Virus record (IMG/VR): IMGVR_UViG_3300042367_000228
Location: 248,001 to 312,000 of that record
Strand: one strand, 5' to 3'
DNA length: 64,000 nt
In this document: piece after piece, positions 436 through 48,993 of the stretch
Position numbering within the stretch: position 1 is the first letter of the stretch
Layout: every line of letters begins with the position of its first letter
Position numbers and translations under genes: made by a program
The notes under the pieces: generated by a model
The model's database searches: none
The model's input: the letters and a program-made list of their open reading frames with translations, nothing else
What the model was told of the DNA's origin: nothing

Positions 436-1436
436 TTTATTTTTGGCACCAAGTTGTCTTTAAATATTTCCCAACAATTTTCCCAAGTCCATCTAAATGA
501 ACTTATATATACACGGTGTCTATCAAGTTTTAAACATTCTTCAATTGCTGTTTCTAAGTTAGTATCCATAATACCATTACGACCTTGTTCTATAATATCA
601 ATAGGACCTGGCACTGGATATGCAGCAACTGGACAACCTAACGACATTGCTTCAATTATTACAATACCAAACGTATCAGCTGCACTTGGAAAAACAAATA
701 CATCAGCATTAACATAATAATCAGCTAACTCTGATCCTGACTTGTATCCTACAAATTCTACTAATGGATATTTCTTTTCTAATCGTTTACGATAAGGACC
801 ATCTCCTACAATTTGCACATGATACTTTTCGTTTTTAGATAATACACATAGATCATCTAATGATTTTTCTTTAGACACTCTGCCTACATATAGCAAAACA
901 GTTTTGTCTGAATCTGCTTTGTGTGCAGTTGGTTGTAGTAATTCTCTATCAACACCGCGTGTCCATGGTATAACATTTGGTCTAAACTTATGTTCTTTAA
1001 GTTCTTCAACCATTGTTTGTGTAGTAGTTAATACTACAGTTGAATCTTTATGAAACCAACGCACGTATGCGTATGTAATCCATTTTGGTATTCCGTATAT
1101 TTTTTTAATAAACTCGGGAAACTTTGTATGATAGGACGTATTATAGTTAAACTTACGGTTGCGACAATATCCACGAGCTGCTAGCCCAATTGGCCCTTCT
1201 GTGCAAATATGAATATAATCTGGATTGATCCTGTCAATCATTTTTCTAATACCAGAGGTACGGCTAAGTTTTACTTCTGGATATTTTGGAGCATCTATAT
1301 AACGGAAATGACTAGGGTTTATAATTTCTATTTCATATCCGTTTAATTCTGCTTGTTTTTTTATATTAGTGAACGTAGTCACTACGCCGTTAACTTGATC
1401 AAACAAGTTGTCGGAAACTATTAAAATTTTTTTCAT
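432..1436 (-). CDS. GT4 (GT-B) family glycosyltransferase
   Basis: QVNGVVTT, YHTKFPEF, LLYVGRVSKEK and DTFGIVIIEAMSLGCPV motifs. Confidence 0.9.
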   Translation of the reverse strand: MKKILIVSDNLFDQVNGVVTTFTNIKKQAELNGYEIEIINPSHFRYIDAPKYPEVKLSRTSGIRKMIDRINPDYIHICTEGPIGLAARGYCRNRKFNYNTSYHTKFPEFIKKIYGIPKWITYAYVRWFHKDSTVVLTTTQTMVEELKEHKFRPNVIPWTRGVDRELLQPTAHKADSDKTVLLYVGRVSKEKSLDDLCVLSKNEKYHVQIVGDGPYRKRLEKKYPLVEFVGYKSGSELADYYVNADVFVFPSAADTFGIVIIEAMSLGCPVAAYPVPGPIDIIEQGRNGIMDTNLETAIEECLKLDRHRVYISSFRWTWENCWEIFKDNLVPKIK

Positions 1437-2035
1437 TTGATTACCTTACAATTTTCAAAGTGCCAACGTTTCATAGAACTGTTTACTCCTGTTGTGTTGC
1501 AATGCGGGCAAGAGATATGTTGTCTATTTTGTTGAGAAGCAGACATTTTAGCTCTAGTTTCTATTGAGTGCGGTTTACCTGTATTATGTGCAGGTTTACC
1601 TGTTTTAATGCCTTTATTCCAAGCAGGCTTAGTTGCTTTGATTCCTTTATTTGGACCAGGTTTACCTTTCTTTGAATCACGTATTTTAGATTTAGTTTCT
1701 TCTGTACACGGTTTTCCTTGAACTGCTCCACTAATACCGTTTTCAGGTATTAAGTTAGCCCACTCTTTAGATTCTACTATATTATTTTCTTTTGAAAAGG
1801 TTAATGCAAATTCAGTTAACATAGTTTTATTTGTATATGGATCTGAAACCCAAATAGTTTCTACAAATTCCCTTCCGTGTGCAGTAATATGATTTTTCCA
1901 ATGTTTTCCTGATCCTAAATATCTTTTAGGATCTTGAGAAGTAGTTTTGCCGAAATATTTTAAACCTGTTACTGAATGTTGTTTGATATACAGATAAGTT
2001 GGTTTTATATCTATATAAATAATTGTGCTGGGCAT
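1433..2035 (-). CDS. Free-standing GIY-YIG homing endonuclease with NUMOD3 repeats and C-terminal CPHC zinc finger
   Basis: YLYIKQH...KYFGKT...YLGSG; NUMOD3-like TEETKSKIR and HSIETRAKMS; CPHC...MKRWHFENCK. Start moved to ATG 2035 because SD AAGGAG precedes it. Confidence 0.8.
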   Translation of the reverse strand: MPSTIIYIDIKPTYLYIKQHSVTGLKYFGKTTSQDPKRYLGSGKHWKNHITAHGREFVETIWVSDPYTNKTMLTEFALTFSKENNIVESKEWANLIPENGISGAVQGKPCTEETKSKIRDSKKGKPGPNKGIKATKPAWNKGIKTGKPAHNTGKPHSIETRAKMSASQQNRQHISCPHCNTTGVNSSMKRWHFENCKVIK

Positions 2036-2115
2036 TAGTGTCTCCTTAGATAACATATATAATGTTTAGTGCTAGTGGATGATAGTGCATCGCGACTAGC
2101 TTTTTTTATTTAGTA
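2036..2115 (-). promoter_or_regulatory. Late promoter plus structured 5' leader of the homing endonuclease
   Basis: CTAAATA, A-run, then hairpin GCTAGT-CGC-GATG...CATC-C-ACTAGC; same architecture as 41696-41765. Confidence 0.6.
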
Positions 2116-14807: not shown

Positions 14808-15955
14808 CAGTTATGTTATCGTTAAGCTCTTTATCTTAACTTCTTATACTTTCATATAAGCTCAGACTATATCTTAATTATAGACTTGCAATTATCAAAG
14901 TGCCATCGTTTCATATTTGACGAATCTCCAATTTTATTGCAATGTGGACAAGTTACTTGTTGTCGTTTTTTATTTTGTTTATATCTTTTTCCAGCAGCTA
15001 TACCAACTACCTCTTTAGAAATTAATCTAGGGTCATCTTTATTAACTGTAAATTTATTACCATTAATATCTTTAACAACTATCCGTCCTGCTGAAGTTGA
15101 TGTATACTGCTTTGATAAAAATTTTTCATCAGTAACTGAAACCATAATAATTTTACCAGTTTCATTAAACACTTTTGTTAACCCTTTTGTAATGCCTACT
15201 AACGATGTATCGTTTTTATTGTCAACTACTACAGTTTCGTTAGTTACGGTTTTCATAACTCGTCTACCGGTTGTGTGACCTGCATATCTATCAGGGTTTG
15301 CATCAAATGTACTTTTTGAAATTTTTACCACTGTACCTAATAAATTATCTTTAGCTACTACTTTATCTATAGAGCATTTACGTATTCGTTCAATACCAAA
15401 GGATGAATGTGTAATTACTCCACGACCACCTTCTGTTAAATTATAAACGTCGTCTCGTTTAATAAAGATCGAATCTACTAATTTAGCTTCATATTCATAT
15501 GCATCATGTTTTGAATTGCAAAATTCTAATATGTCGCGTTTGAAATTAGTTTTTCCATATTTCTTTATTGCTTGTTTTAATAATTTTCCAGACCCTATAT
15601 AGCCGTCGTTAATATTAGTAGTTTCATGTACACCAATATAAATGGTGTTATTAATTAAATTAGTTGTTTTGTAAACAAAATATATCTTATCCATATCTTC
15701 CCCTCCTATAATTTTATTTATCATAAGATTAGAAGATCTATAATTTTCCGCACTCTTGGGTCTTTACTGTCCTATCTGGACTCCATGACCTAGTCGTTGA
15801 ACCTTGAACTTATTCCTAAGTCCCTTGGCTGCTGATTTCCCAATCTATTCATTTTTTAACGTTCGCACTTATCATTACTAATTATGCTGTAGTATGAATA
15901 GCTCTAAGGGGTTCCCAGCAATTCACGGAATTTTTATACGGGAGGCTAATACTTA
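14808..15955 (-). mobile_element. Group I intron (phage IA-type) in dnaK, 1148 nt
   Basis: Exon 1 ends in U (GGU), intron ends in G; P1 GGU|UAA..UUAGCC; P GAAUUGCUGGGAA (15911-15924), Q AAUCAGCAG (15829-15837), R GUUCAACGACUA (15791-15802), S AAGAUAUAGUCU (14864-14875); P9 with GAAA loop. Removal restores TFLGG-EDFD. Confidence 0.93.
14867..15694 (-). CDS. Intron-encoded GIY-YIG homing endonuclease
   Basis: FVYKTTNLINNTIYIGVH...YIGSG; C-terminal CPHC...MKRWHFDNCK; internal late promoter GATAAATA ~15715; stop TAG lies inside the S element. Confidence 0.88.
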   Translation of the reverse strand: MDKIYFVYKTTNLINNTIYIGVHETTNINDGYIGSGKLLKQAIKKYGKTNFKRDILEFCNSKHDAYEYEAKLVDSIFIKRDDVYNLTEGGRGVITHSSFGIERIRKCSIDKVVAKDNLLGTVVKISKSTFDANPDRYAGHTTGRRVMKTVTNETVVVDNKNDTSLVGITKGLTKVFNETGKIIMVSVTDEKFLSKQYTSTSAGRIVVKDINGNKFTVNKDDPRLISKEVVGIAAGKRYKQNKKRQQVTCPHCNKIGDSSNMKRWHFDNCKSIIKI

Positions 15956-40832: not shown

Positions 40833-41120
40833 TTATACAATAAGACCTGTAGTAGCTTTAGTGTAAGAAGATGCTGATTCTTTTTCAGTTGGTTCTAATA
40901 CTACTACCGTTGCGATTGCAATCTTAATTGTTTTATCTGGATCAACAGTAAACAAATAAGGTGCCATTCCAATTCCACCTTGTGCAGCTGCTAATACACG
41001 TGGTTTTGAAACTTTAATGTATTTGTCAGTTTCTTCAACTAATGATGCAATTAGTTCTTCGCCTGAAGTAAGTTTAATTGTAACTACTTCGCCTGGTGAT
41101 ACACCTTTATCTATAATCAT
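40833..41120 (-). CDS. Conserved phage protein (Sm-like fold suspected)
   Basis: GEVVTIKLTSGEELIA...KP pattern. Confidence 0.55.
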   Translation of the reverse strand: MIIDKGVSPGEVVTIKLTSGEELIASLVEETDKYIKVSKPRVLAAAQGGIGMAPYLFTVDPDKTIKIAIATVVVLEPTEKESASSYTKATTGLIV

Positions 41121-41349
41121 AATTTGCCTTTAAGTATTGTTGTAATTCTGAAAACCCACCGATGTAATTGCCATCAATTTGAATCTGTGGTAATGTTCTT
41201 GCTGTTGGTACATCTTCTAACAGTTGTTCTTTAGTCCAACCTCCATTAGAGATATTTCTTTCTTCAAAGTTAATGTTTTTCATTTGTAACAAGCTCTTAG
41301 CTTGCACGCAGTACGGGCACTGGTCTTTCGACCAAATTATTGCTGTCAT
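41107..41349 (-). CDS. grx: Glutaredoxin
   Basis: CPYC, RTLPQI, YIGGF. Confidence 0.93.
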   Translation of the reverse strand: MTAIIWSKDQCPYCVQAKSLLQMKNINFEERNISNGGWTKEQLLEDVPTARTLPQIQIDGNYIGGFSELQQYLKANYDYR

Positions 41350-41454: not shown

Positions 41455-41631
41455 TTACGTCTTTTTTTCAAATATCTGTCTGAGCGCATCTATCAAAGCC
41501 TTTTCGTCTGTCGTAGTCCATAATCTATATGATGGGTGTTTTCCTTCTCTAAGCATTGCGCATGGACATACAGGATCCTCGCCCTGCGGTCCCATGCATG
41601 CACAAATGGTTAAATCGTTGTATTCTTTCAT
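41455..41631 (-). CDS. Small Cys-rich hypothetical protein (58 aa)
   Basis: MKEYNDLTICACMGPQGEDPVCPCAM...; SD AAGG; sigma70-type promoter at 41660-41688. Confidence 0.55.
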   Translation of the reverse strand: MKEYNDLTICACMGPQGEDPVCPCAMLREGKHPSYRLWTTTDEKALIDALRQIFEKKT

Positions 41632-41695
41632 AATTACCTTATGATGTTTAAAAAACTGTATTATACAATATTATTATCATCCTGTCAATAATATT

Positions 41696-41765
41696 GATAA
41701 ATAAAAAAATGTAGTTCACGATATGGGGATATCTAACTACTCTAACGCCGCGGGAGGCATCAGCA
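41696..41765 (+). promoter_or_regulatory. Late promoter plus structured leader of HNH endonuclease
   Basis: GATAAATA, A-run, GTAGTT-CAC-GATAT-GGGG-ATATC-T-AACTAC, then GCC-GCGGGA-GGC around the SD. Confidence 0.6.
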
Positions 41766-42545
41766 ATGATATTTATCGATAACAAATACACACGATTATA
41801 TTTTAAAATAATCAATCGCGCTAACTCTAAAAGATTGTCTGAGTATTCAGAAAATCATCATATTATTCCAGAATCATTTTTTATTAATCGATCTAGAAAA
41901 GGACCTGCCGGATGGCTTAATGGAAACCCAGAAGATTCATCAAATATTGTGTCGTTAACTGCAAGAGAACATTTTATTTGTCATTGGTTACTTATTAAAA
42001 TGACTACCGGAGATGCTAAACACAAAATGATATTTGCTATAACGATGATGAAACGTAAAGGCACAAATCAACAAAATAGATATAACACTATGATTACTAG
42101 TAGAGTTTATGCAATTTATAAGGAACAATCTGCTAAAATAAAAAGTGAGATATATTTTGGTCGAGTGCGGAATAAAACACTATATACATTTTGTCATTCT
42201 AATGGAACAGTAGAAACTTGCTCTATACTAGAATTATCTCACAAATATAATCTAGAGCGTTCTAGTATTGCGCATCTTGTTAAAAAACCGTTTGGAAAGC
42301 ATCATGTAAAAGGATGGTCTATTAACCATCCTATATTAGATACTGCTAGAAGTGTATTATATTCCGGCTCAGGAGGACCAAAGTATGATCATACTGTTTA
42401 TTCATTTAAACATAAAAGTGGAATAACTGAACAATGTACTAAGTATGATTTATTTTCTAAATATAATTTAGCTAGAGACGGAATATATTACATTTGTAAT
42501 GGTAAACAAAAATCATCACAAGGATGGTTTTTAGATATCAGGTAA
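41766..42545 (+). CDS. Free-standing HNH (MobE-like) homing endonuclease
   Basis: ENHHIIPES...NIVSLTAREHFICHWLL; two C-terminal HTH-like repeats ending KGW/QGW; convergent on the nrdB 3' end. Confidence 0.85.
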   Translation: MIFIDNKYTRLYFKIINRANSKRLSEYSENHHIIPESFFINRSRKGPAGWLNGNPEDSSNIVSLTAREHFICHWLLIKMTTGDAKHKMIFAITMMKRKGTNQQNRYNTMITSRVYAIYKEQSAKIKSEIYFGRVRNKTLYTFCHSNGTVETCSILELSHKYNLERSSIAHLVKKPFGKHHVKGWSINHPILDTARSVLYSGSGGPKYDHTVYSFKHKSGITEQCTKYDLFSKYNLARDGIYYICNGKQKSSQGWFLDIR

Positions 42546-43634
42546 CTCGGCGTAGTTAACGTCGCCGCCCATTACTCCTACTACATAATTTACACTCTCC
42601 GACTCTTGTAAAGCAGTTTGTTTTTTACTGGGGTCGGAATGTTTTGTAAACCACGGTATAGGTGTTGATTTAGGGGCTATTGCTTTATATTTAATACCAA
42701 CTTCTTTTAAAGCGTGTACTGCAGTATAGTCAACAAATTCTTTTAAGATGTTAGCGTTAAGTCCAATTACTGGACCTTTTAAGAACAAGTAGTCTGCCCA
42801 TTCTTTTTCCTCGCGGATCACATCGAGATACATGCTATAAACTTCTTCTTCACATTCTGCTTTAATTTCGGTAAAACGCGGATCATCTTTAATTACTAAA
42901 TTAATCATGTAAGCAGTCCATTCTTTATGTAACAGCTCATCTTGTAATATAAGTGCAATAATGTTACCGTTACCGATAAACAACTTATTTTCGACCATTG
43001 CTAAACTAGTAGCAAACGATACCATAAATCTAAATGCTTCTAATGCGTAACTTGCATGTAGCGCAAGCCAAATAGCTTTAATATGATCTCTTTCATCTAC
43101 AGGTAATCCGAGTTCTTTTTGACAGTTAAATATGTGTAATTTATTATAGTATCTACCGACACTGCTTGCCATGTCAACAATCGGTGTAGTATCATGAATA
43201 GTATTAAATATCTCTTTTGGAACATTATAGATATTACGAATAATATGACTATAACTGCGACTATGAATATTTGATTCATAGAATCCCCAATTAAGCATTA
43301 ACAGTTCTGCTTCAGGTACACTTACTACAGGTGTAAACACTTGGGTAGGCCCACGTCCTTGTAAGCTGTCTAATGCAGTTTGTCTTAATAAGTTGCTAGT
43401 AAATATATGTTTAACCGCATCACTAGCATCTTTGAAATCATTAGCGTCTTTGCTTAATGAGATCTCTTCCGGAGTCCAAAAGAATCCTCTAGCAGTTGCC
43501 TCGAACTTTTGAATACGTGGATATCGTACTTCTTCAAATCGTTGAATTGTAACTGTTCCGTCTAGAAACAATTTTCTAGACAGATAGTTAGTTTGTTCTC
43601 CTAGGTTATATTGTTCTTCACTCATAGCCGTCAC
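42531..43634 (-). CDS. nrdB: Class Ia ribonucleotide reductase beta subunit
   Basis: FFWTPEE, DSLQGR, ESNIHSRSY, LEAFRFMVSFA, DELLH. Confidence 0.95.
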   Translation of the reverse strand: MTAMSEEQYNLGEQTNYLSRKLFLDGTVTIQRFEEVRYPRIQKFEATARGFFWTPEEISLSKDANDFKDASDAVKHIFTSNLLRQTALDSLQGRGPTQVFTPVVSVPEAELLMLNWGFYESNIHSRSYSHIIRNIYNVPKEIFNTIHDTTPIVDMASSVGRYYNKLHIFNCQKELGLPVDERDHIKAIWLALHASYALEAFRFMVSFATSLAMVENKLFIGNGNIIALILQDELLHKEWTAYMINLVIKDDPRFTEIKAECEEEVYSMYLDVIREEKEWADYLFLKGPVIGLNANILKEFVDYTAVHALKEVGIKYKAIAPKSTPIPWFTKHSDPSKKQTALQESESVNYVVGVMGGDVNYAELPDI

Positions 43635-45151: not shown

Positions 45152-45703
45152 TTAACTAACTGTTTCATTTATGTAGTTCCAGTTTATTATTTTCCATTGA
45201 TTTTCTAAGTACTTTTTCTTGTCTGATTGATAGTCTAACGCCCATGAATGTTCCCACCAATCAACTAACAATACAATGTCTTTTTTAATAGCATGATTAG
45301 TTATTGTTTTGATCTTGCCATCTTTAGCAAGATAGACCCAACCACTGCCTTGTATGCCCATTGCTACTTTTAAAAACTCTTCTTTAAACTTATCAAAAGT
45401 TTTATAATGTGTTTCAATTAAATCTAAAACTTTGCCAACTGGTTTGTTTAAGTTGCCAGTTGACTCTTGATATTGTTGGAATAAGATATTGTGTAAAAAT
45501 ACACCTGCTTCATTAAACACAGGATCACCTTCACCTGCATTATAACGCTTTGCGTATGTTTTAGCAAGACGTTCATAATGATAATCTAATGTTGCTTTTG
45601 ATATAGCAGGACTTAACTCATCCATTCCGTATGGTAGAGGATCTATTTTTAATGATGCAGGTTTACCTTCAGTTATGAATTGCTTAATAAAACTATAGCT
45701 CAT
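45152..45703 (-). CDS. sod: Fe/Mn superoxide dismutase
   Basis: LPY...TLDYHY, LHNILF, QGSGWVYL, DWWEHSW. Confidence 0.88.
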   Translation of the reverse strand: MSYSFIKQFITEGKPASLKIDPLPYGMDELSPAISKATLDYHYERLAKTYAKRYNAGEGDPVFNEAGVFLHNILFQQYQESTGNLNKPVGKVLDLIETHYKTFDKFKEEFLKVAMGIQGSGWVYLAKDGKIKTITNHAIKKDIVLLVDWWEHSWALDYQSDKKKYLENQWKIINWNYINETVS

Positions 45704-46662
45704 AGCTTACAGGCCTCGCAGGATTCTTCATCGTCTTCAATAATTGCACTAGGTAAATCAACTTCGGCTTCTTCTTTACTACCTGTTTTATCAATTAAAC
45801 TATAGTAGAAAGTTTTCAAACCCCAATAGTGACCTAACATTAAGTTTTTAGCAATTAGTGTAGTTGGGACTTTTCTACCTTCAAAGTGTCTAGGTGAATA
45901 AAATGTATTTGTGCTAATACTTTGATCTACGTATGCAGCCAATACAGCAGCAGTTTTCAAATAACCTACACAATCAGTTTGTTCCCACATAAGTTGATAT
46001 TTGTTTTTCAATTTATGATATTCCGGAACTACTTGTGTAAGTGAACCAGCTTTTGATTCTTTAACTTGAATAAGTTGCATTGGCATTTCAATTCCATTAG
46101 TTGAATTAATTACAACTGAACTTGATTCTACTGGAGCTATAGCCATTTGAGTCGCATTTCGTACACCGTATTTTTTCATTTCAACACGCAATGGTTCCCA
46201 ATCAAGTTCTGGTGTAAAATCAGTCAATTCATTAACACCGTCTGCACGTAGTTCCCATGGAAATATACCTTGTCCGTATCGAGTTTTATCACTATCTAAA
46301 CATGGTCCACGCTCCTTAGCCAGTTCAACCGATATTTCAGTAGTATAAAATGCTAAATGTTCCATCCAGCTTTTAACTTCAGCAAGCATATCTGCGTCTC
46401 CGTATTTAAAATTGCGTTTAGCTGCCCAGTATGCTAAATTTGTAACTCCAATTCCTAATGGTCGAATTTCATCATTACTTAGTTTACTGTGGATTGACAG
46501 ATAATCTTGGTAATCTAAAATATTGTTTAAACTGCGGTGAAGAATACGACAAGCTCTGCGCATATCTTCCGGATTTCTAAAACTCCCCCAATTAATACTG
46601 CCTAAGGTGCATAAGGCTATTTTTGGAACTTTACGCACACATTCTTTTTTAATTATTTTCAT
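45700..46662 (-). CDS. nrdA: RNR alpha subunit C-terminal fragment (NrdA-b)
   Basis: IALCTLGSINWG, RPLGIG, AIAPVESSS, DQSISTN, KTFYY, CEACKL; preceded by non-NrdA MKIIKKECVRKVP. Confidence 0.93.
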   Translation of the reverse strand: MKIIKKECVRKVPKIALCTLGSINWGSFRNPEDMRRACRILHRSLNNILDYQDYLSIHSKLSNDEIRPLGIGVTNLAYWAAKRNFKYGDADMLAEVKSWMEHLAFYTTEISVELAKERGPCLDSDKTRYGQGIFPWELRADGVNELTDFTPELDWEPLRVEMKKYGVRNATQMAIAPVESSSVVINSTNGIEMPMQLIQVKESKAGSLTQVVPEYHKLKNKYQLMWEQTDCVGYLKTAAVLAAYVDQSISTNTFYSPRHFEGRKVPTTLIAKNLMLGHYWGLKTFYYSLIDKTGSKEEAEVDLPSAIIEDDEESCEACKL

Positions 46663-47425
46663 GATTTATTGTTCTTCCTATACGCCAATTTGTATTTTCT
46701 AAAAGATACTCATTAATAGACGATGAGTCAATCCTAATATTAGTGTACCCATCTGTTATCCATCTCCATTTTGAAGACTGTATTGATAACAAACTTTTTT
46801 GTGTTGGGCTTCTATAATGCGGGTTGTATTTAACTTGTTCAGTGGCAGTTAATGTAGCGTTAACTAAGTTAATCAAATCTGTATGATTTTTAATTCCTCG
46901 ATTAGATATCAATCTACTGCTAATAGATAGCTCAGATTTTAATACAGAATCAATTTCATTTCGAAGTAAATAACTACCGTATTTGAAATTTTCATGTATA
47001 TAATTAACTATAGTGTTAATAATATCGATAGCTGTAATATCAGGCCGAGCATTTCCGTTATTCATACCTGCACTTAGCTTACTTCTATTTTTACCCCATT
47101 CTATTAATTGTTTTTTAGAATATCGTTCTTTTGTGTTGCCGCCATCACCGCCACGGGTCATATTGTACCCGTAGCTAAACGTATCAAGCAAGTCTATATA
47201 ATATATTTCTTTTGATTTTGCATCAGATTGTGTACTACATTCATCTAATTTTTCAGTTATAATAGTATTTTCACCATATTTTCTAATTGCACGATGAAAA
47301 TATGTATCAGAACCGTTTCTACTATCTTGAATGTGTTCGTCTAATCGAACGTTAATATTTTTTTCAGTGTATCCTATGTATTTTTTGTTATTAATAGTGT
47401 GACAATATATATTATAAGTTTTCAT
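46649..47425 (-). CDS. GIY-YIG homing endonuclease inserted in nrdA
   Basis: NIYCHTINNKKYIGYT...RLDEH...FHRAIRKYG...E.YYI...GYNMTRGGDG; own late promoter CTAAATA at ~47446-47452. Confidence 0.88.
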   Translation of the reverse strand: MKTYNIYCHTINNKKYIGYTEKNINVRLDEHIQDSRNGSDTYFHRAIRKYGENTIITEKLDECSTQSDAKSKEIYYIDLLDTFSYGYNMTRGGDGGNTKERYSKKQLIEWGKNRSKLSAGMNNGNARPDITAIDIINTIVNYIHENFKYGSYLLRNEIDSVLKSELSISSRLISNRGIKNHTDLINLVNATLTATEQVKYNPHYRSPTQKSLLSIQSSKWRWITDGYTNIRIDSSSINEYLLENTNWRIGRTINHENN

Positions 47426-47463
47426 AAATATCTTCCTCTTGCTTGTATTTAGCAGAGATACTA

Positions 47464-48993
47464 CTACCCACTTATTAAAAGATTATCAATATCGTCATCT
47501 TCAGACAACTCTCGAACTTTCTTTTTCTCACCTGATTTTAATAATACCGTGTGTTCTCCTGCTAATGTTACTTCCTCTCCAGTGTCAAGTGTGAGTTTAA
47601 ATCCACCTTCATCGGATAACGAATTAAACGGTGCAGTTGGTAAAAGTATTTCGCAGCATAAATTACTTTGATAAATTGTATGCCATAACGGATCAAATGG
47701 TCCTTGCTTAATTACGTTATCTATAAAGACTAAGTAGATGCGCCCGGTGTCAGTTCGTTCTTTTAGGAGTCCTCCTTTGAATACTTCTTCCGCAGACATG
47801 GTCTTCTTCCGAACTCCTGTATTTTTTTCATACTGTAGGTACAGTTTTTCAAAGAGAGCTGTATCAGTGTAAAACGCTTCGTATAAGTCTGGAACTTCAT
47901 TAGGATCAAAAAATGTTATGTTTTCTTTGTTTTTAAATCTACGCCAAAAGAACGCGCTTAATACAACGCTGTAATCTAAATGACGCACCCGTGTTTCATC
48001 TGTGCCTTGATTGTTTTTAAGTACAATTAAGTCGTCGAACTGATAATGCCAAATCGGATATGTTACAGTAGCACTAGCATTTCTAATACCACCTTGTGAA
48101 CAGCAACGCAAGTCACCAAACCATTTCTTTAAAAATGGAATCATACCTGTGTGCATAATTTCACCACCGCGTATAGGACTTCCTAGTGCGCGTACACGAC
48201 CAATTTCTAAACCTATGCCAGCACGTTTGCTAGCATATTTTGCCATCATCTCGCCACTAGCAAATATAGAATCCAAATCGTCATCACTGCGTATGAGAAC
48301 GCAGCTGCTGAATTGTTTAGTTGGAGTTCCGAGCCCAGCAAGAACGGGTGTAGCAAGAGTAAATAAGCCATCGGATGCAGCATTATAATATTCCTTAATA
48401 TATTTCATTCTAGCTGCATTTGGTTCTTCCTTATGGAACACAGTTGCAGCTGCAATCATATACCTAACTTGTGGAGTTTCGTAAATGTCTTTAGTAGATC
48501 GATTACGGACTAAGTATTTCTCAATAAGCTGTTCAATTGCAGCATATGAGTAAGTTTCATCTTTTGAATGATCAAGCATGTCATTCATTTTGTTCCATTC
48601 TTCAGTTGAATACCACTCTAATAACTCTGGTGTGTATAATCCAACTTCGATGTTCTTTTTAACTATTGTAAATAGATGCGGTGGCTCGTATTGGCCGTAT
48701 ACATCTTTGCGGAGCATAGACAAACGCTGTTTGCCTGCAACGTATTGATAATTTGTATGACCTACATCTGGGTTGGCGTCAACATCAATTAAGTTAACGA
48801 TTGCTCGCAGTGTAATTTCGTCAATTTCAGATGTAGTAATATTATCGTAAAATTGTGGCTGGCTTTTAATTTCGATCATTGATTGACTAACATCGGCAAT
48901 TCCACTGCAAATCTTTGCAATCTGCGCCTGCCATTTGTCAATTGTTAGTTCTACTTTAGTGCCATTTCTTTTTGTAACTGTTATTTTATTCAT
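47464..48993 (-). CDS. nrdA: RNR alpha subunit N-terminal fragment (NrdA-a)
   Basis: ATP cone VTKRNG, QFSSCVL, CSQGGIRN, QSNLCCEILLP, then a ~47-aa non-NrdA tail. Confidence 0.93.
   Translation of the reverse strand: MNKITVTKRNGTKVELTIDKWQAQIAKICSGIADVSQSMIEIKSQPQFYDNITTSEIDEITLRAIVNLIDVDANPDVGHTNYQYVAGKQRLSMLRKDVYGQYEPPHLFTIVKKNIEVGLYTPELLEWYSTEEWNKMNDMLDHSKDETYSYAAIEQLIEKYLVRNRSTKDIYETPQVRYMIAAATVFHKEEPNAARMKYIKEYYNAASDGLFTLATPVLAGLGTPTKQFSSCVLIRSDDDLDSIFASGEMMAKYASKRAGIGLEIGRVRALGSPIRGGEIMHTGMIPFLKKWFGDLRCCSQGGIRNASATVTYPIWHYQFDDLIVLKNNQGTDETRVRHLDYSVVLSAFFWRRFKNKENITFFDPNEVPDLYEAFYTDTALFEKLYLQYEKNTGVRKKTMSAEEVFKGGLLKERTDTGRIYLVFIDNVIKQGPFDPLWHTIYQSNLCCEILLPTAPFNSLSDEGGFKLTLDTGEEVTLAGEHTVLLKSGEKKKVRELSEDDDIDNLLISG

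What the first reader, a model, noticed from the sequence alone, without database searches (positions are those of the whole stretch)
2036..2115. Conserved covarying leader hairpin shared by two unrelated free-standing homing endonucleases
Seen: GIY-YIG leader TAAATA-A-run-GCTAGT-CGC-GATG-loop-CATC-C-ACTAGC-ACTAA, and HNH leader (41696-41765) TAAATA-A-run-T-GTAGTT-CAC-GATAT-loop-ATATC-T-AACTAC-TCTAA. Both have a 6-bp stem, a 3-nt CRC versus 1-nt internal loop, a GAT stem and a trailing CTAA, with compensatory changes. Established: T4 homing endonucleases are controlled by late promoters and RBS-occluding hairpins. Inference: a common RNA or DNA control module, here downstream of the late start, that travels with different nuclease families.
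Basis: partly seen in the sequence, partly recalled or inferred. Interest (0 to 1): 0.6.

Follow-up and report, generated by a model that had tools for sequence, protein, structure and literature searches.

The report
Two-way control cassette of phage homing endonucleases
The shared "leader hairpin" is real and sits in front of selfish nuclease genes in well over a hundred uncultured T4-like phage sequences, but its RNA folds are tuned for the opposite strand, so it most likely encodes a small antisense RNA that restrains the nuclease.

Summary
The two window copies (2036-2115 on the minus strand; 41696-41765 on the plus strand) belong to five copies in this 372-kb T4-like jumbo phage. All five lie directly upstream of homing-endonuclease (HE) genes. 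Two pattern scans of IMG/VR gave 139 unique variants, upstream of GIY-YIG, HNH and one DUF559/Vsr-like ORF.

Dassa et al. 2009 (PMC2677866) already reported conserved hairpins with TATAAATA upstream of GIY-YIG and Vsr-like HE genes. The association itself is therefore not new.

What appears new:
- **Strand.** Both helices, HP1 and a second helix HP2, are selected on the strand antisense to the HE. Non-Watson-Crick cells are almost all sense A.C, which is antisense G.U. One G.U is kept in 68 of 70 sequences. The consensus fold is -20.2 kcal/mol antisense and -12.3 sense.
- **Terminator shape.** On the antisense strand, HP1 is followed by a U-tract that is the complement of the HE's late promoter.
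- **Second promoter motif.** The first codons of the ORF or uORF carry TATTTA(T) in three reading frames and at synonymous sites. Read on the antisense strand this is a second NATAAATA late promoter.

Best reading (confidence 0.5): face-to-face late promoters give the HE mRNA and a roughly 60-85-nt cis-antisense RNA that covers the ribosome-binding site. No expression data could be obtained.

The parts
2107..2114 (-). Sense late promoter ACTAAATA of the GIY-type HE. With the A-run 2101-2106 it reads on the plus strand as the U-tract after HP1.
   Evidence: Sequence. NATAAATA enrichment upstream of genes. gp55 homologue. T4 late motif spans -13 to -6 (PMC1524935).
2071..2100 (.). HP1 of the GIY-type copy: 6-bp lower stem, bulged C, G:C pair, bulged C, 4-bp upper stem. 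On the plus strand it is followed directly by T7 then ATTTA (terminator-like).
2052..2066 (.). Second small hairpin of the GIY-type leader (AACAT / ATGTT).
   Evidence: MFE fold. The sub-family relative L023 keeps it.
1433..2035 (-). GIY-YIG-like / NUMOD3 homing endonuclease ORF (200 aa from the ATG at 2035; SD AAGGAG at 2042-2047). Its 3' end overlaps the downstream glycosyltransferase gene by 4 nt.
2014..2021 (+). Antisense late-promoter motif TATAAATA inside codons 5-8 of the HE ORF. The predicted start is G2027.
   Evidence: Sequence. Family-wide conservation of TATTTA at ORF starts.
2027..2108 (+). Predicted cis-antisense RNA (about 82 nt) covering the AUG, SD, small hairpin and HP1, and ending in the U-tract. 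No gene lies on this strand here.
   Evidence: Inference from promoter and terminator geometry. Not tested by expression data.
41696..41703 (+). Sense late promoter GATAAATA of HNH1. With 41704-41710 it reads on the minus strand as A then T6 then ATTTATC after HP1.
41711..41740 (.). HP1 of the HNH1 copy.
41742..41763 (.). HP2. It is 8 bp with two G.U pairs on the minus-strand RNA but only 3 bp on the sense RNA. The SD GGGAGG (41752-41757) lies in its loop and 3' arm.
   Evidence: (L008: sense -13.8, antisense -17.5 kcal/mol).
41766..42545 (+). HNH homing endonuclease HNH1 (259 aa), antisense to its neighbours. Its 3' end overlaps the 3' end of nrdB by 15 nt.
41770..41777 (-). Antisense late-promoter motif GATAAATA in codons 2-4 of HNH1. 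The predicted start is the G at 41764.
41703..41764 (-). Predicted cis-antisense RNA (about 62 nt): HP2', then HP1', then the U-tract.
   Evidence: Inference. Not tested by expression data.
41660..41688 (-). Perfect sigma-70-type promoter (TTGACA, 17 nt, TATAAT) immediately after the terminator-like element. It faces the small gene 41631..41455.
   Evidence: 12 of 12. The same arrangement is seen in 36 of 63 anti-oriented IMG/VR copies.

Best explanation
The 'leader' is a compact, portable, two-way expression cassette that travels with free-standing homing-endonuclease genes of T4-like phages.

On the HE strand, a gp55-type late promoter (NATAAATA) should start the mRNA at or within 2 nt of the first base of HP1. 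HP2 follows, with the Shine-Dalgarno sequence in its loop and 3' arm, then (T)CAGC and the ATG.

On the opposite strand, the first codons of the ORF (or of a vestigial uORF) spell a second NATAAATA promoter pointing back. Its transcript should start about 1 nt before HP2'. It would run through the anti-SD, HP2' and HP1', and stop at HP1' plus a U-tract. That U-tract is the complement of the sense promoter and its A-run.

The product would be a roughly 60-85-nt, two-hairpin cis-antisense RNA, fully complementary to the HE 5' UTR. I infer that it holds HE expression down, by occluding the ribosome-binding site and/or by duplex cleavage, helped by convergent-promoter interference.

When the cassette sits antisense to its neighbours (about three cases in four), the same terminator also ends incoming flanking transcripts. 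An early sigma-70 promoter often follows directly.

Shown: homology, HE association, strand of structural selection, the promoter motifs and their geometry. Inferred: that both promoters fire, that HP1' terminates, and the sign of regulation.
For: - **Copies and association.** Five copies in the genome and nothing else above noise, all upstream of HE-like ORFs. There are 139 unique IMG/VR variants. Of their 117 complete downstream ORFs, 74 match phrog_314 and 44 match phrog_655, both HE families. By their first 95 residues, the 125 downstream ORFs of at least 100 aa form clusters of 55, 29 and 3 (mostly GIY-YIG-like) and 33 (HNH), plus singletons that include one DUF559 protein.
- **Strand of selection in HP1.** In the set not selected on HP1 sequence (101 unique): lower stem 567 Watson-Crick, 39 sense A.C/C.A, 0 G.U; R:Y pair 83, 18, 0; upper stem 411, 21, 3. 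In set 1: 374, 11, 0.
- **Strand of selection in HP2.** It shows the same bias.
- **RNAalifold on the same 70 leaders.** Antisense: -20.21 kcal/mol, 19 pairs in two helices, 14 with compensatory changes, one G.U kept in 68 of 70. Sense: -12.32 kcal/mol, 11 pairs, HP1 only.
- **Single-sequence MFE.** Antisense is more stable in 124 of 137 (means -17.2 and -12.3 kcal/mol; Wilcoxon p = 2e-22).
- **Antisense promoter motif.** TATTTA lies in the first 36 nt of 121 of 137 ORFs or uORFs, against 6.4% of ORFs in this genome. It occurs in all three reading frames. Of 96 MxIY ORFs, 94 use NNT-ATT-TAY, against 14.7% expected from their own codon usage (p = 1.6e-75). 102 of the 121 read NATAAATA on the antisense strand. 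In HNH2 and HNH3 the motif survives in a 17-codon uORF.
- **Geometry.** Both motifs are followed by 5 nt, then G, then a helix, which fits the -13 to -6 rule. Hexamer spacing is 63-68 bp in 99 of 121.
- **Late transcription system.** NATAAATA is enriched upstream of genes and a gp55 homologue is present.
- **Precedent.** In S-PM2, the antisense RNA CfrI starts 57 nt inside an HE ORF and crosses its start codon.
Against: - There are no expression data.
- The simple terminator scan does not call HP1. Its stems are bulged and often AT-rich, and in the commonest sub-family two bases (AC) separate the stem from the U-tract.
- TATTTAT is the reverse complement of the sense promoter, so its conservation alone cannot separate 'antisense promoter' from 'pairs with the promoter sequence in read-through RNA'.
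- In about three quarters of copies, flanking transcription already supplies antisense RNA, so a dedicated promoter is not strictly needed there.
- The wobble asymmetry is not corrected for phylogeny, and a strand-specific mutation bias is not formally excluded.
- A degenerate HP1 in Pseudoalteromonas phage vB_Psh_XG4 lacks both the U-tract and the antisense motif.
Confidence: 0.5

Rival explanations
1. Terminator/insulator only. HP1 plus the U-tract (with HP2' as an extra 3' structure) simply ends transcripts of the flanking operon that run antisense through an HE inserted in the opposite orientation. An early promoter then restarts the next gene, as in a PeSL-type terminator-promoter junction. 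There is no dedicated antisense RNA.
For: The upstream neighbour is divergent in 90 cases and co-oriented in 32. The downstream neighbour is convergent in 63 and co-oriented in 19. A sigma-70 promoter matching at least 10 of 12 positions follows the element on the antisense strand in 36 of 63 such cases, against 3 of 63 on the control strand. It is perfect at HNH1 and, read by eye, at the copy next to the tmRNA gene. The antisense bias of the HP1 pairs fits a terminator.
Against: It does not explain the synonymous-site, frame-independent conservation of TATTTA(T) at the ORF start. That motif is equally frequent in co-oriented copies, 28 of 32, as in anti-oriented copies, 77 of 88. It does not explain a conserved 8-bp HP2' with a near-invariant G.U. 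It gives no role to the element in co-oriented copies, such as the window's GIY-type copy and the fractured terminase loci.
Confidence: 0.25
2. HP1 acts on the sense mRNA, as a 5'-terminal stabilising hairpin or a binding site for a regulator of late HE transcripts.
For: With the -13 to -6 rule, the sense start falls on or within 2 nt of the first base of HP1. A 5'-terminal hairpin is a known stabiliser (my own knowledge). Most HP1 cells are Watson-Crick, so the sense hairpin also forms. The two bulged C and the closing G:C are conserved.
Against: All 57 non-canonical cells of the lower stem and the R:Y pair weaken the sense fold and keep the antisense fold; none does the reverse. HP2 barely exists on the sense strand. 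Sense folds are about 5 kcal/mol weaker.
Confidence: 0.12
3. Classical I-TevI / mobE logic. In read-through transcripts from upstream, the promoter sequence AUAAAUA pairs with UAUUUAU at codons 2-5. This encloses the SD and AUG and blocks translation until late transcripts, which lack the 5' arm, appear.
For: The two heptamers are exact reverse complements and both are conserved. The mechanism is established for I-TevI, segB and Aeh1 mobE (PMC2988022), and Dassa et al. invoke it.
Against: Seven A-U pairs closing a loop of about 65 nt with two helices would be marginally stable (my estimate, not computed). The pairing covers codons 2-5, not the SD. In about three quarters of copies the upstream gene is divergent, so no sense read-through exists, yet the motif is kept. 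It does not explain the antisense-biased helices.
Confidence: 0.08
4. DNA-level element: an operator for HE autorepression (as for I-TevI), or a recombination hot spot that shuffles HE cassettes (as proposed for PeSLs).
For: Stems, loops and ORF types occur in mosaic combinations. For example, the fifth genome copy has the lower stem of HNH1 and the upper stem of the GIY-type copy. I-TevI binds an operator overlapping its late promoter.
Against: A strand-asymmetric G.U versus A.C pattern has no meaning for duplex DNA. Nucleases with unrelated DNA-binding domains share the element. The stem sequence is free to vary as long as pairing holds.
Confidence: 0.05

Closest known systems
Conserved 5'-UTR hairpins with TATAAATA upstream of GIY-YIG and Vsr-like free-standing HE genes in 'fractured genes' of ocean metagenomes (Dassa et al. 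2009, PMC2677866)
   Same: A hairpin just upstream of HE ORFs of unrelated families, a T4-type late promoter motif, two conserved motifs that pair in the stem, and 3' overlap of the HE with the next gene. Module-bearing HEs here also split genes: T4-type terminase in L099 and L158.
   Different: They read it as a sense-strand translational hairpin of the Aeh1 mobE type. No strand analysis, second helix, antisense promoter or terminator was described. Their figure and supplement are not held, so sequence identity with this module could not be checked.
CfrI antisense RNA of cyanophage S-PM2 (Millard et al. 2010, as cited in PMC2984593 and annotated in NC_006820)
   Same: A cis-antisense RNA in a T4-like phage that starts inside the 5' part of a free-standing HE ORF and crosses its start codon and leader.
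   Different: It is about 200-225 nt long and runs into psbA. The locus has a sense-strand hairpin, then T7, then TATAAATA instead of this module, and model R1 finds nothing there. The HE is of the endonuclease VII type. Its function is unknown.
RBS-sequestering hairpins with an internal late promoter (I-TevI, I-TevII, I-TevIII, segB, Aeh1 mobE; PMC2988022)
   Same: Late-promoter-driven HE genes with a structured leader, and the goal of keeping HE expression low and late.
   Different: There the SD lies inside a strong local hairpin and the late promoter lies within it. Here the promoter precedes both helices, HP1 does not touch the SD, and the helices are tuned for the other strand.
PeSL composite promoter-terminator motifs of T4-type phages (PMC2839356, PMC4122927)
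   Same: On the flanking strand, a stem-loop terminator is directly followed by an early sigma-70 promoter. The unit is mobile and modular.
   Different: PeSLs are not linked to HE genes or late promoters. Here the early promoter is present in only 36 of 63 anti-oriented copies and is absent from co-oriented ones.
Cis-antisense control of mobile-element genes (IS10 RNA-OUT/RNA-IN, hok/sok, plasmid CopA/CopT); from my own knowledge
   Same: A short, structured antisense RNA from a promoter inside the 5' end of the target gene. It overlaps the RBS, has bulged stems, and its loops are complementary to loops in the target.
   Different: Here both promoters are phage late promoters, the antisense terminator overlaps the target's own promoter, and nothing has been shown experimentally.

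Membership tests
T4-type RBS-occluding HE hairpin (I-TevI / mobE type) | The Shine-Dalgarno sequence and/or AUG is sequestered in a stable local hairpin. | tested here: not met
   HP1 ends 15-30 nt before the SD. The sense HP2 holds only part of the SD at -2 to -5 kcal/mol.
T4-type RBS-occluding HE hairpin (I-TevI / mobE type) | The late promoter lies inside the structure, so late transcripts lack its 5' arm. | tested here: not met
   NATAAATA lies upstream of both helices. The predicted +1 is at the first base of HP1.
Intrinsic (Rho-independent) terminator, antisense strand | A stable stem-loop immediately followed by a U-tract on the transcribed strand. | tested here: inconclusive
   HP1' is followed by U5-7 then AUUUA, or by AC then U4 A U3, in all copies. 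The simple consensus scan does not call it because the stem is bulged and AT-rich.
Intrinsic (Rho-independent) terminator, antisense strand | Transcripts end in the U-tract. | not testable with these tools
Cis-encoded antisense RNA gene | A promoter on the antisense strand inside or near the 5' end of the target ORF. | tested here: met
   This holds as a motif only. TAAATA is on the antisense strand in 121 of 137 copies, across frames and at synonymous sites, against a 6.4% background.
Cis-encoded antisense RNA gene | RNA structure is conserved on the antisense strand. | tested here: met
Cis-encoded antisense RNA gene | The antisense transcript is detected. | not testable with these tools
Dassa 2009 HE-upstream hairpin | A hairpin plus TATAAATA upstream of GIY-YIG and Vsr-like free-standing HE ORFs, including in fractured genes. 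| tested here: met
Dassa 2009 HE-upstream hairpin | The same two MEME motifs (their Figure 4A and Figure S4). | not testable with these tools
   The figure and supplement are not held.
PeSL | A stem-loop followed by an early sigma-70 promoter between variable genes. | tested here: inconclusive
   Present in 36 of 63 anti-oriented copies and absent in co-oriented ones. PeSL papers report no link to HE genes or late promoters.
Any Rfam 15 family | A covariance-model match. | tested here: not met
   Nothing on the element in the five genome copies at E <= 5, except a chance-level C0465 hit (22.6 bits, E = 3).

The most novel reading that the evidence does not exclude
Free-standing homing endonucleases of at least three nuclease superfamilies share a self-contained 'governor' cassette. 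Two face-to-face gp55 late promoters about 65 bp apart make the HE mRNA and a two-hairpin antisense RNA whose terminator is the complement of the mRNA promoter. The fast-covarying stems and loops would make each cassette's antisense RNA specific for its own mRNA. Several HEs could then coexist in one phage, five here, without cross-talk, much like plasmid incompatibility groups.
Probability: 0.35. Interest if true: 0.78.

Novelty: new variant of a known kind. Interest (0 to 1): 0.62.

Why it matters
How selfish nuclease genes are kept harmless enough to persist in phage genomes is a long-standing question. The known answers are T4-specific RBS hairpins, autorepression and transcript processing.

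A portable antisense-RNA cassette, shared by GIY-YIG, HNH and DUF559/Vsr-like endonucleases in well over a hundred uncultured T4-like phage contigs, would be a general and testable solution. It would add a widespread small-RNA class to phage biology. It would explain why the first codons and uORFs of these genes are conserved at the nucleotide level. It would also give annotators a sharp marker for HE cassettes and fractured genes.

The strand test used here, sense A.C against antisense G.U, also shows how a 'leader hairpin' can be assigned to the wrong strand.

Tried and rejected
- **Isolated phages.** blastn of two leaders against 50,697 GenBank phage records found nothing. Model R1 on five isolate genomes with related GIY-YIG genes gave only a degenerate HP1 in Pseudoalteromonas phage vB_Psh_XG4.
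- **S-PM2.** The CfrI / F-CphI locus is not homologous to the module.
- **Rfam.** No family matches the element.
- **Fifth HE-like protein (L010:1577-2371).** There is no PDB sequence match. Only weak PHROG hits were found. BLASTP to the DUF559-bearing L122 protein aligns only the N-terminal zinc-finger part, so its nuclease fold stays unassigned.
- **Whole-protein clustering of downstream ORFs.** It collapsed into one cluster through shared NUMOD3 and DNA-binding parts, so the first 95 residues were clustered instead.
- **Crude neighbour calls with small ORFs.** These were unreliable and were redone with ORFs of at least 80 aa.
- **Mechanisms considered and rejected.** HP1 as an RBS-occluding hairpin, a sense-strand terminator (no U-tract follows it on that strand), and a DNA cruciform or operator as the main explanation.
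- **YUNR loop motifs.** I looked for them by eye and found no consistent pattern.

Full report
**Context**

The window is bases 248001-312000 of a single-contig virus record of 372,016 bp with 35.6% G+C and direct terminal repeats. Nearly all genes are on the minus strand. PHROG hits are to tail fibres, virion proteins and ribonucleotide reductase.

The phage uses T4-type late transcription. NATAAATA occurs 135 times in the genome. Of these, 72 lie in the roughly 10% of sequence that is intergenic, and 64 lie within 100 nt upstream of a same-strand ORF. A homologue of the T4 late sigma factor gp55 is encoded at G000:C1:106142-106420 (E = 3.7e-7). In T4 the motif spans -13 to -6, and its first T is poorly conserved in relatives (PMC1524935).

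**The observation**

The GIY-type gene most likely starts at the ATG at 2035, behind AAGGAG.

Searching the whole genome found three more copies:
- Two lie upstream of related HNH/NUMOD3 endonucleases. Each is reached through a 17-codon uORF whose stop overlaps the HE start (ATGA).
- One lies upstream of a 265-aa zinc-finger protein with weak HE PHROG hits.

A covariance model built from four copies scores the five sites at E <= 1.8e-8; the next hit has E = 7. On the four copies all 40 pair cells are paired, and 5 of 10 pairs change on both sides.

At least four other HE-like genes in the genome lack the module:
- For two of them a plain late promoter abutting the SD was seen. These are a GIY-YIG gene at window 14867-15724 and the GIY-YIG gene that splits nrdA.
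- An HNH paralogue at genome position 240023 has an unrelated upstream region.
- A further HNH paralogue lies near genome position 152560.

**Spread and association**

Two pattern scans of IMG/VR were run. One was anchored on the promoter and the HP1 core. The other was anchored only on the promoter, CTCTAA and CAGCATG. Together with the genome copies these give 139 unique variants.

Of 117 complete downstream ORFs, 74 match phrog_314 and 44 match phrog_655, both HE families. Pfam finds NUMOD3, HNH and GIY-YIG domains. By their first 95 residues, the 125 downstream ORFs of at least 100 aa fall into clusters of 55, 29 and 3 (mostly GIY-YIG-like) and 33 (HNH), plus singletons. One singleton carries DUF559, a Vsr-like nuclease domain.

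Some module-bearing HEs split a T4-type terminase gene, in loci L099 and L158.

It is also largely prior art. Dassa et al. 2009 reported conserved hairpins with TATAAATA and two stem-forming motifs upstream of GIY-YIG and Vsr-like HE ORFs in 15 of 16 ocean-metagenome loci. They read them as translational hairpins (PMC2677866). Their figure is not held, so identity of the motif is probable but unverified.

**Anatomy, refined**

HP1 has these parts in order:
- a 6-bp lower stem;
- a bulged C;
- an R:Y pair, where G goes with C and A goes with T;
- a second bulged C;
- an invariant G:C pair;
- a variable 3-5-bp upper stem.

Covariation occurs at almost every variable pair.

The conserved CTAA after HP1 is the 5' arm of a second helix, HP2. 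It pairs with (T)CAG just before the ATG and holds the Shine-Dalgarno sequence in its loop and 3' arm.

**The strand of selection**

This is the main new result. In the 101 unique leaders that were not selected on HP1 sequence, pair cells were classed as Watson-Crick, sense A.C or C.A (which read as G.U on the antisense RNA), or sense G.U:

| Region | Watson-Crick | Sense A.C / C.A | Sense G.U |
|---|---|---|---|
| Lower stem | 567 | 39 | 0 |
| R:Y pair | 83 | 18 | 0 |
| Upper stem | 411 | 21 | 3 (loop-proximal) |

The first set gave 374, 11 and 0. HP2 shows the same bias.

RNAalifold was run on one set of 70 leaders in both orientations:

| Strand | Consensus energy | Pairs | Helices | Pairs with compensatory change |
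|---|---|---|---|---|
| Antisense | -20.21 kcal/mol | 19 | 2 | 14 |
| Sense | -12.32 kcal/mol | 11 | HP1 only | 9 |

On the antisense strand one G.U pair is kept in 68 of 70 sequences. On the sense strand the A.C cells count as broken.

Single-sequence folds are more stable on the antisense strand in 124 of 137 cases. The means are -17.2 and -12.3 kcal/mol (Wilcoxon p = 2e-22).

A.C and G.U each arise from one transition, so a ratio near 80 to 3, with fixed wobble positions, is hard to assign to mutation bias. The counts are not corrected for phylogeny. The structured RNA therefore belongs to the strand opposite the HE gene.

**What that strand looks like**

On the antisense strand, HP1' is followed at once by U5-7 then AUUUA, or, in the commonest sub-family, by AC then U4 A U3 A. 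This tract is the complement of the sense promoter and its A-run. The shape is that of an intrinsic terminator, although the simple scan does not call it.

The first codons of the ORF carry TATTTA(T) in 121 of 137 cases, against 6.4% of ORFs in this genome. The motif sits in three different reading frames:
- MxIY, 98 cases;
- MYLQ or MYLF, 9 cases;
- MIFI, 6 cases;
- a few cases further in, as in the window's GIY-type copy.

Among 96 MxIY ORFs, 94 use NNT-ATT-TAY, where their own codon usage predicts 14.7% (p = 1.6e-75). In HNH2 and HNH3 the block survives as the start of the uORF.

Read on the antisense strand, the block is NATAAATA in 102 cases and N[GC]TAAATA in 19.

Both promoter motifs are followed by 5 nt and then a G that abuts a helix. 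The sense start would fall on the first base of HP1. The antisense start would fall 1 nt before HP2'. The two hexamers are 63-68 bp apart in 99 of 121 cases.

**Mechanism proposed**

Face-to-face late promoters would give the HE mRNA and a roughly 60-85-nt antisense RNA: HP2' with the anti-SD, then HP1', then the U-tract. This RNA would be complementary to the whole 5' UTR. The predicted coordinates are window 2027 to about 2108 on the plus strand and 41764 to about 41703 on the minus strand.

By analogy with other cis-antisense systems, I infer that it lowers HE translation or mRNA stability. Protection of the mRNA is not excluded.

Precedent exists in S-PM2. There the antisense RNA CfrI starts 57 nt inside the F-CphI ORF and crosses its start codon, but that locus is not homologous to this module.

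**Context of insertion**

The cassette is antisense to its neighbours in about three cases out of four. The upstream neighbour is divergent in 90 cases and co-oriented in 32. Both neighbours are on the opposite strand in 48 cases and both co-oriented in 12.

In the anti-oriented layout, flanking transcripts cross the HE in antisense and meet the same terminator. In 36 of 63 such copies a sigma-70 promoter matching at least 10 of 12 positions follows within a few bases, against 3 of 63 on the control strand. It is perfect at HNH1, window 41688-41660. Read by eye, it is also perfect next to the phage tmRNA gene.

This resembles PeSL terminator-promoter units, which have not been linked to HEs or late promoters. 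A terminator-only reading is therefore the main rival. It leaves three things unexplained: the frame-independent promoter motif, which is equally frequent in co-oriented copies; the conserved HP2'; and the co-oriented copies themselves.

**Limits**

No isolate in GenBank carries the full module. Only a degenerate HP1 was found, in Pseudoalteromonas phage vB_Psh_XG4. Rfam has no matching family. Promoter firing, termination and the sign of regulation are all inferences.

**Verdict**

- The association itself was published in 2009.
- The antisense reading appears new and is directly testable.

Noticed in passing
window 45700-48993 (-): nrdA is a fractured gene. The N part is at 47464-48993 (ATP-cone, barrel positions 1-222). 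A GIY-YIG HE lies at 46649-47425. The C part is at 45700-46662 (barrel positions 223-522) and overlaps the HE 3' end by 14 nt. This HE has a plain CTAAATA late promoter and no hairpin module.
   Followed up: partly
L010:1040-1466 (-), about genome 242613-243039, just outside the window: The phage carries a permuted tmRNA gene (RF04321 at 101.9 bits; beta_tmRNA at 90.4 bits). It is driven by a perfect sigma-70-type promoter that directly follows the fifth module on that strand.
   Followed up: partly
L006:622-693 and L006:2594-2667 (+): Two tRNA genes flank the HNH2 cassette near genome position 346 kb.
   Followed up: no
L001:3190-3242 (-) and L002 equivalent: HNH2 and HNH3 are reached through a 17-codon uORF (MYLFNTF...) with a strong SD. 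Its stop overlaps the HE start (ATGA). The uORF start keeps the conserved block that reads as the antisense promoter.
   Followed up: yes
window 42531-42545: The 3' ends of HNH1 (+) and nrdB (-) overlap by 15 nt. Convergent 3' overlaps of 4-59 nt between the HE and its neighbour recur in many IMG/VR loci.
   Followed up: partly
L099:3694-6385 (+) and L158:6099-6860 (-): The T4-type large terminase is split into an N part that ends with an intein-like CF.G.T tail and a C part with about 155 extra N-terminal residues. A module-bearing HE lies between them. This host-gene type is not in the list of Dassa et al. as quoted.
   Followed up: partly
G000:C1:106142-106420 (-): A gp55 (late sigma) homologue within a 283-aa ORF. 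It has its own CATAAATA motif upstream.
   Followed up: partly
window 41107-41349 (-) and 42531-43634 (-): Glutaredoxin and nrdB genes flank HNH1. Ribonucleotide reductase loci are known HE hot spots, and this genome has HEs at both nrdA and nrdB.
   Followed up: no
L192:320-362 (+): Pseudoalteromonas phage vB_Psh_XG4, an isolate, has an HP1-like hairpin with the C-G-C / C core upstream of a GIY-YIG gene. It lacks the adjacent A-run/U-tract and the antisense TAAATA, so it may be a decayed or ancestral form.
   Followed up: partly
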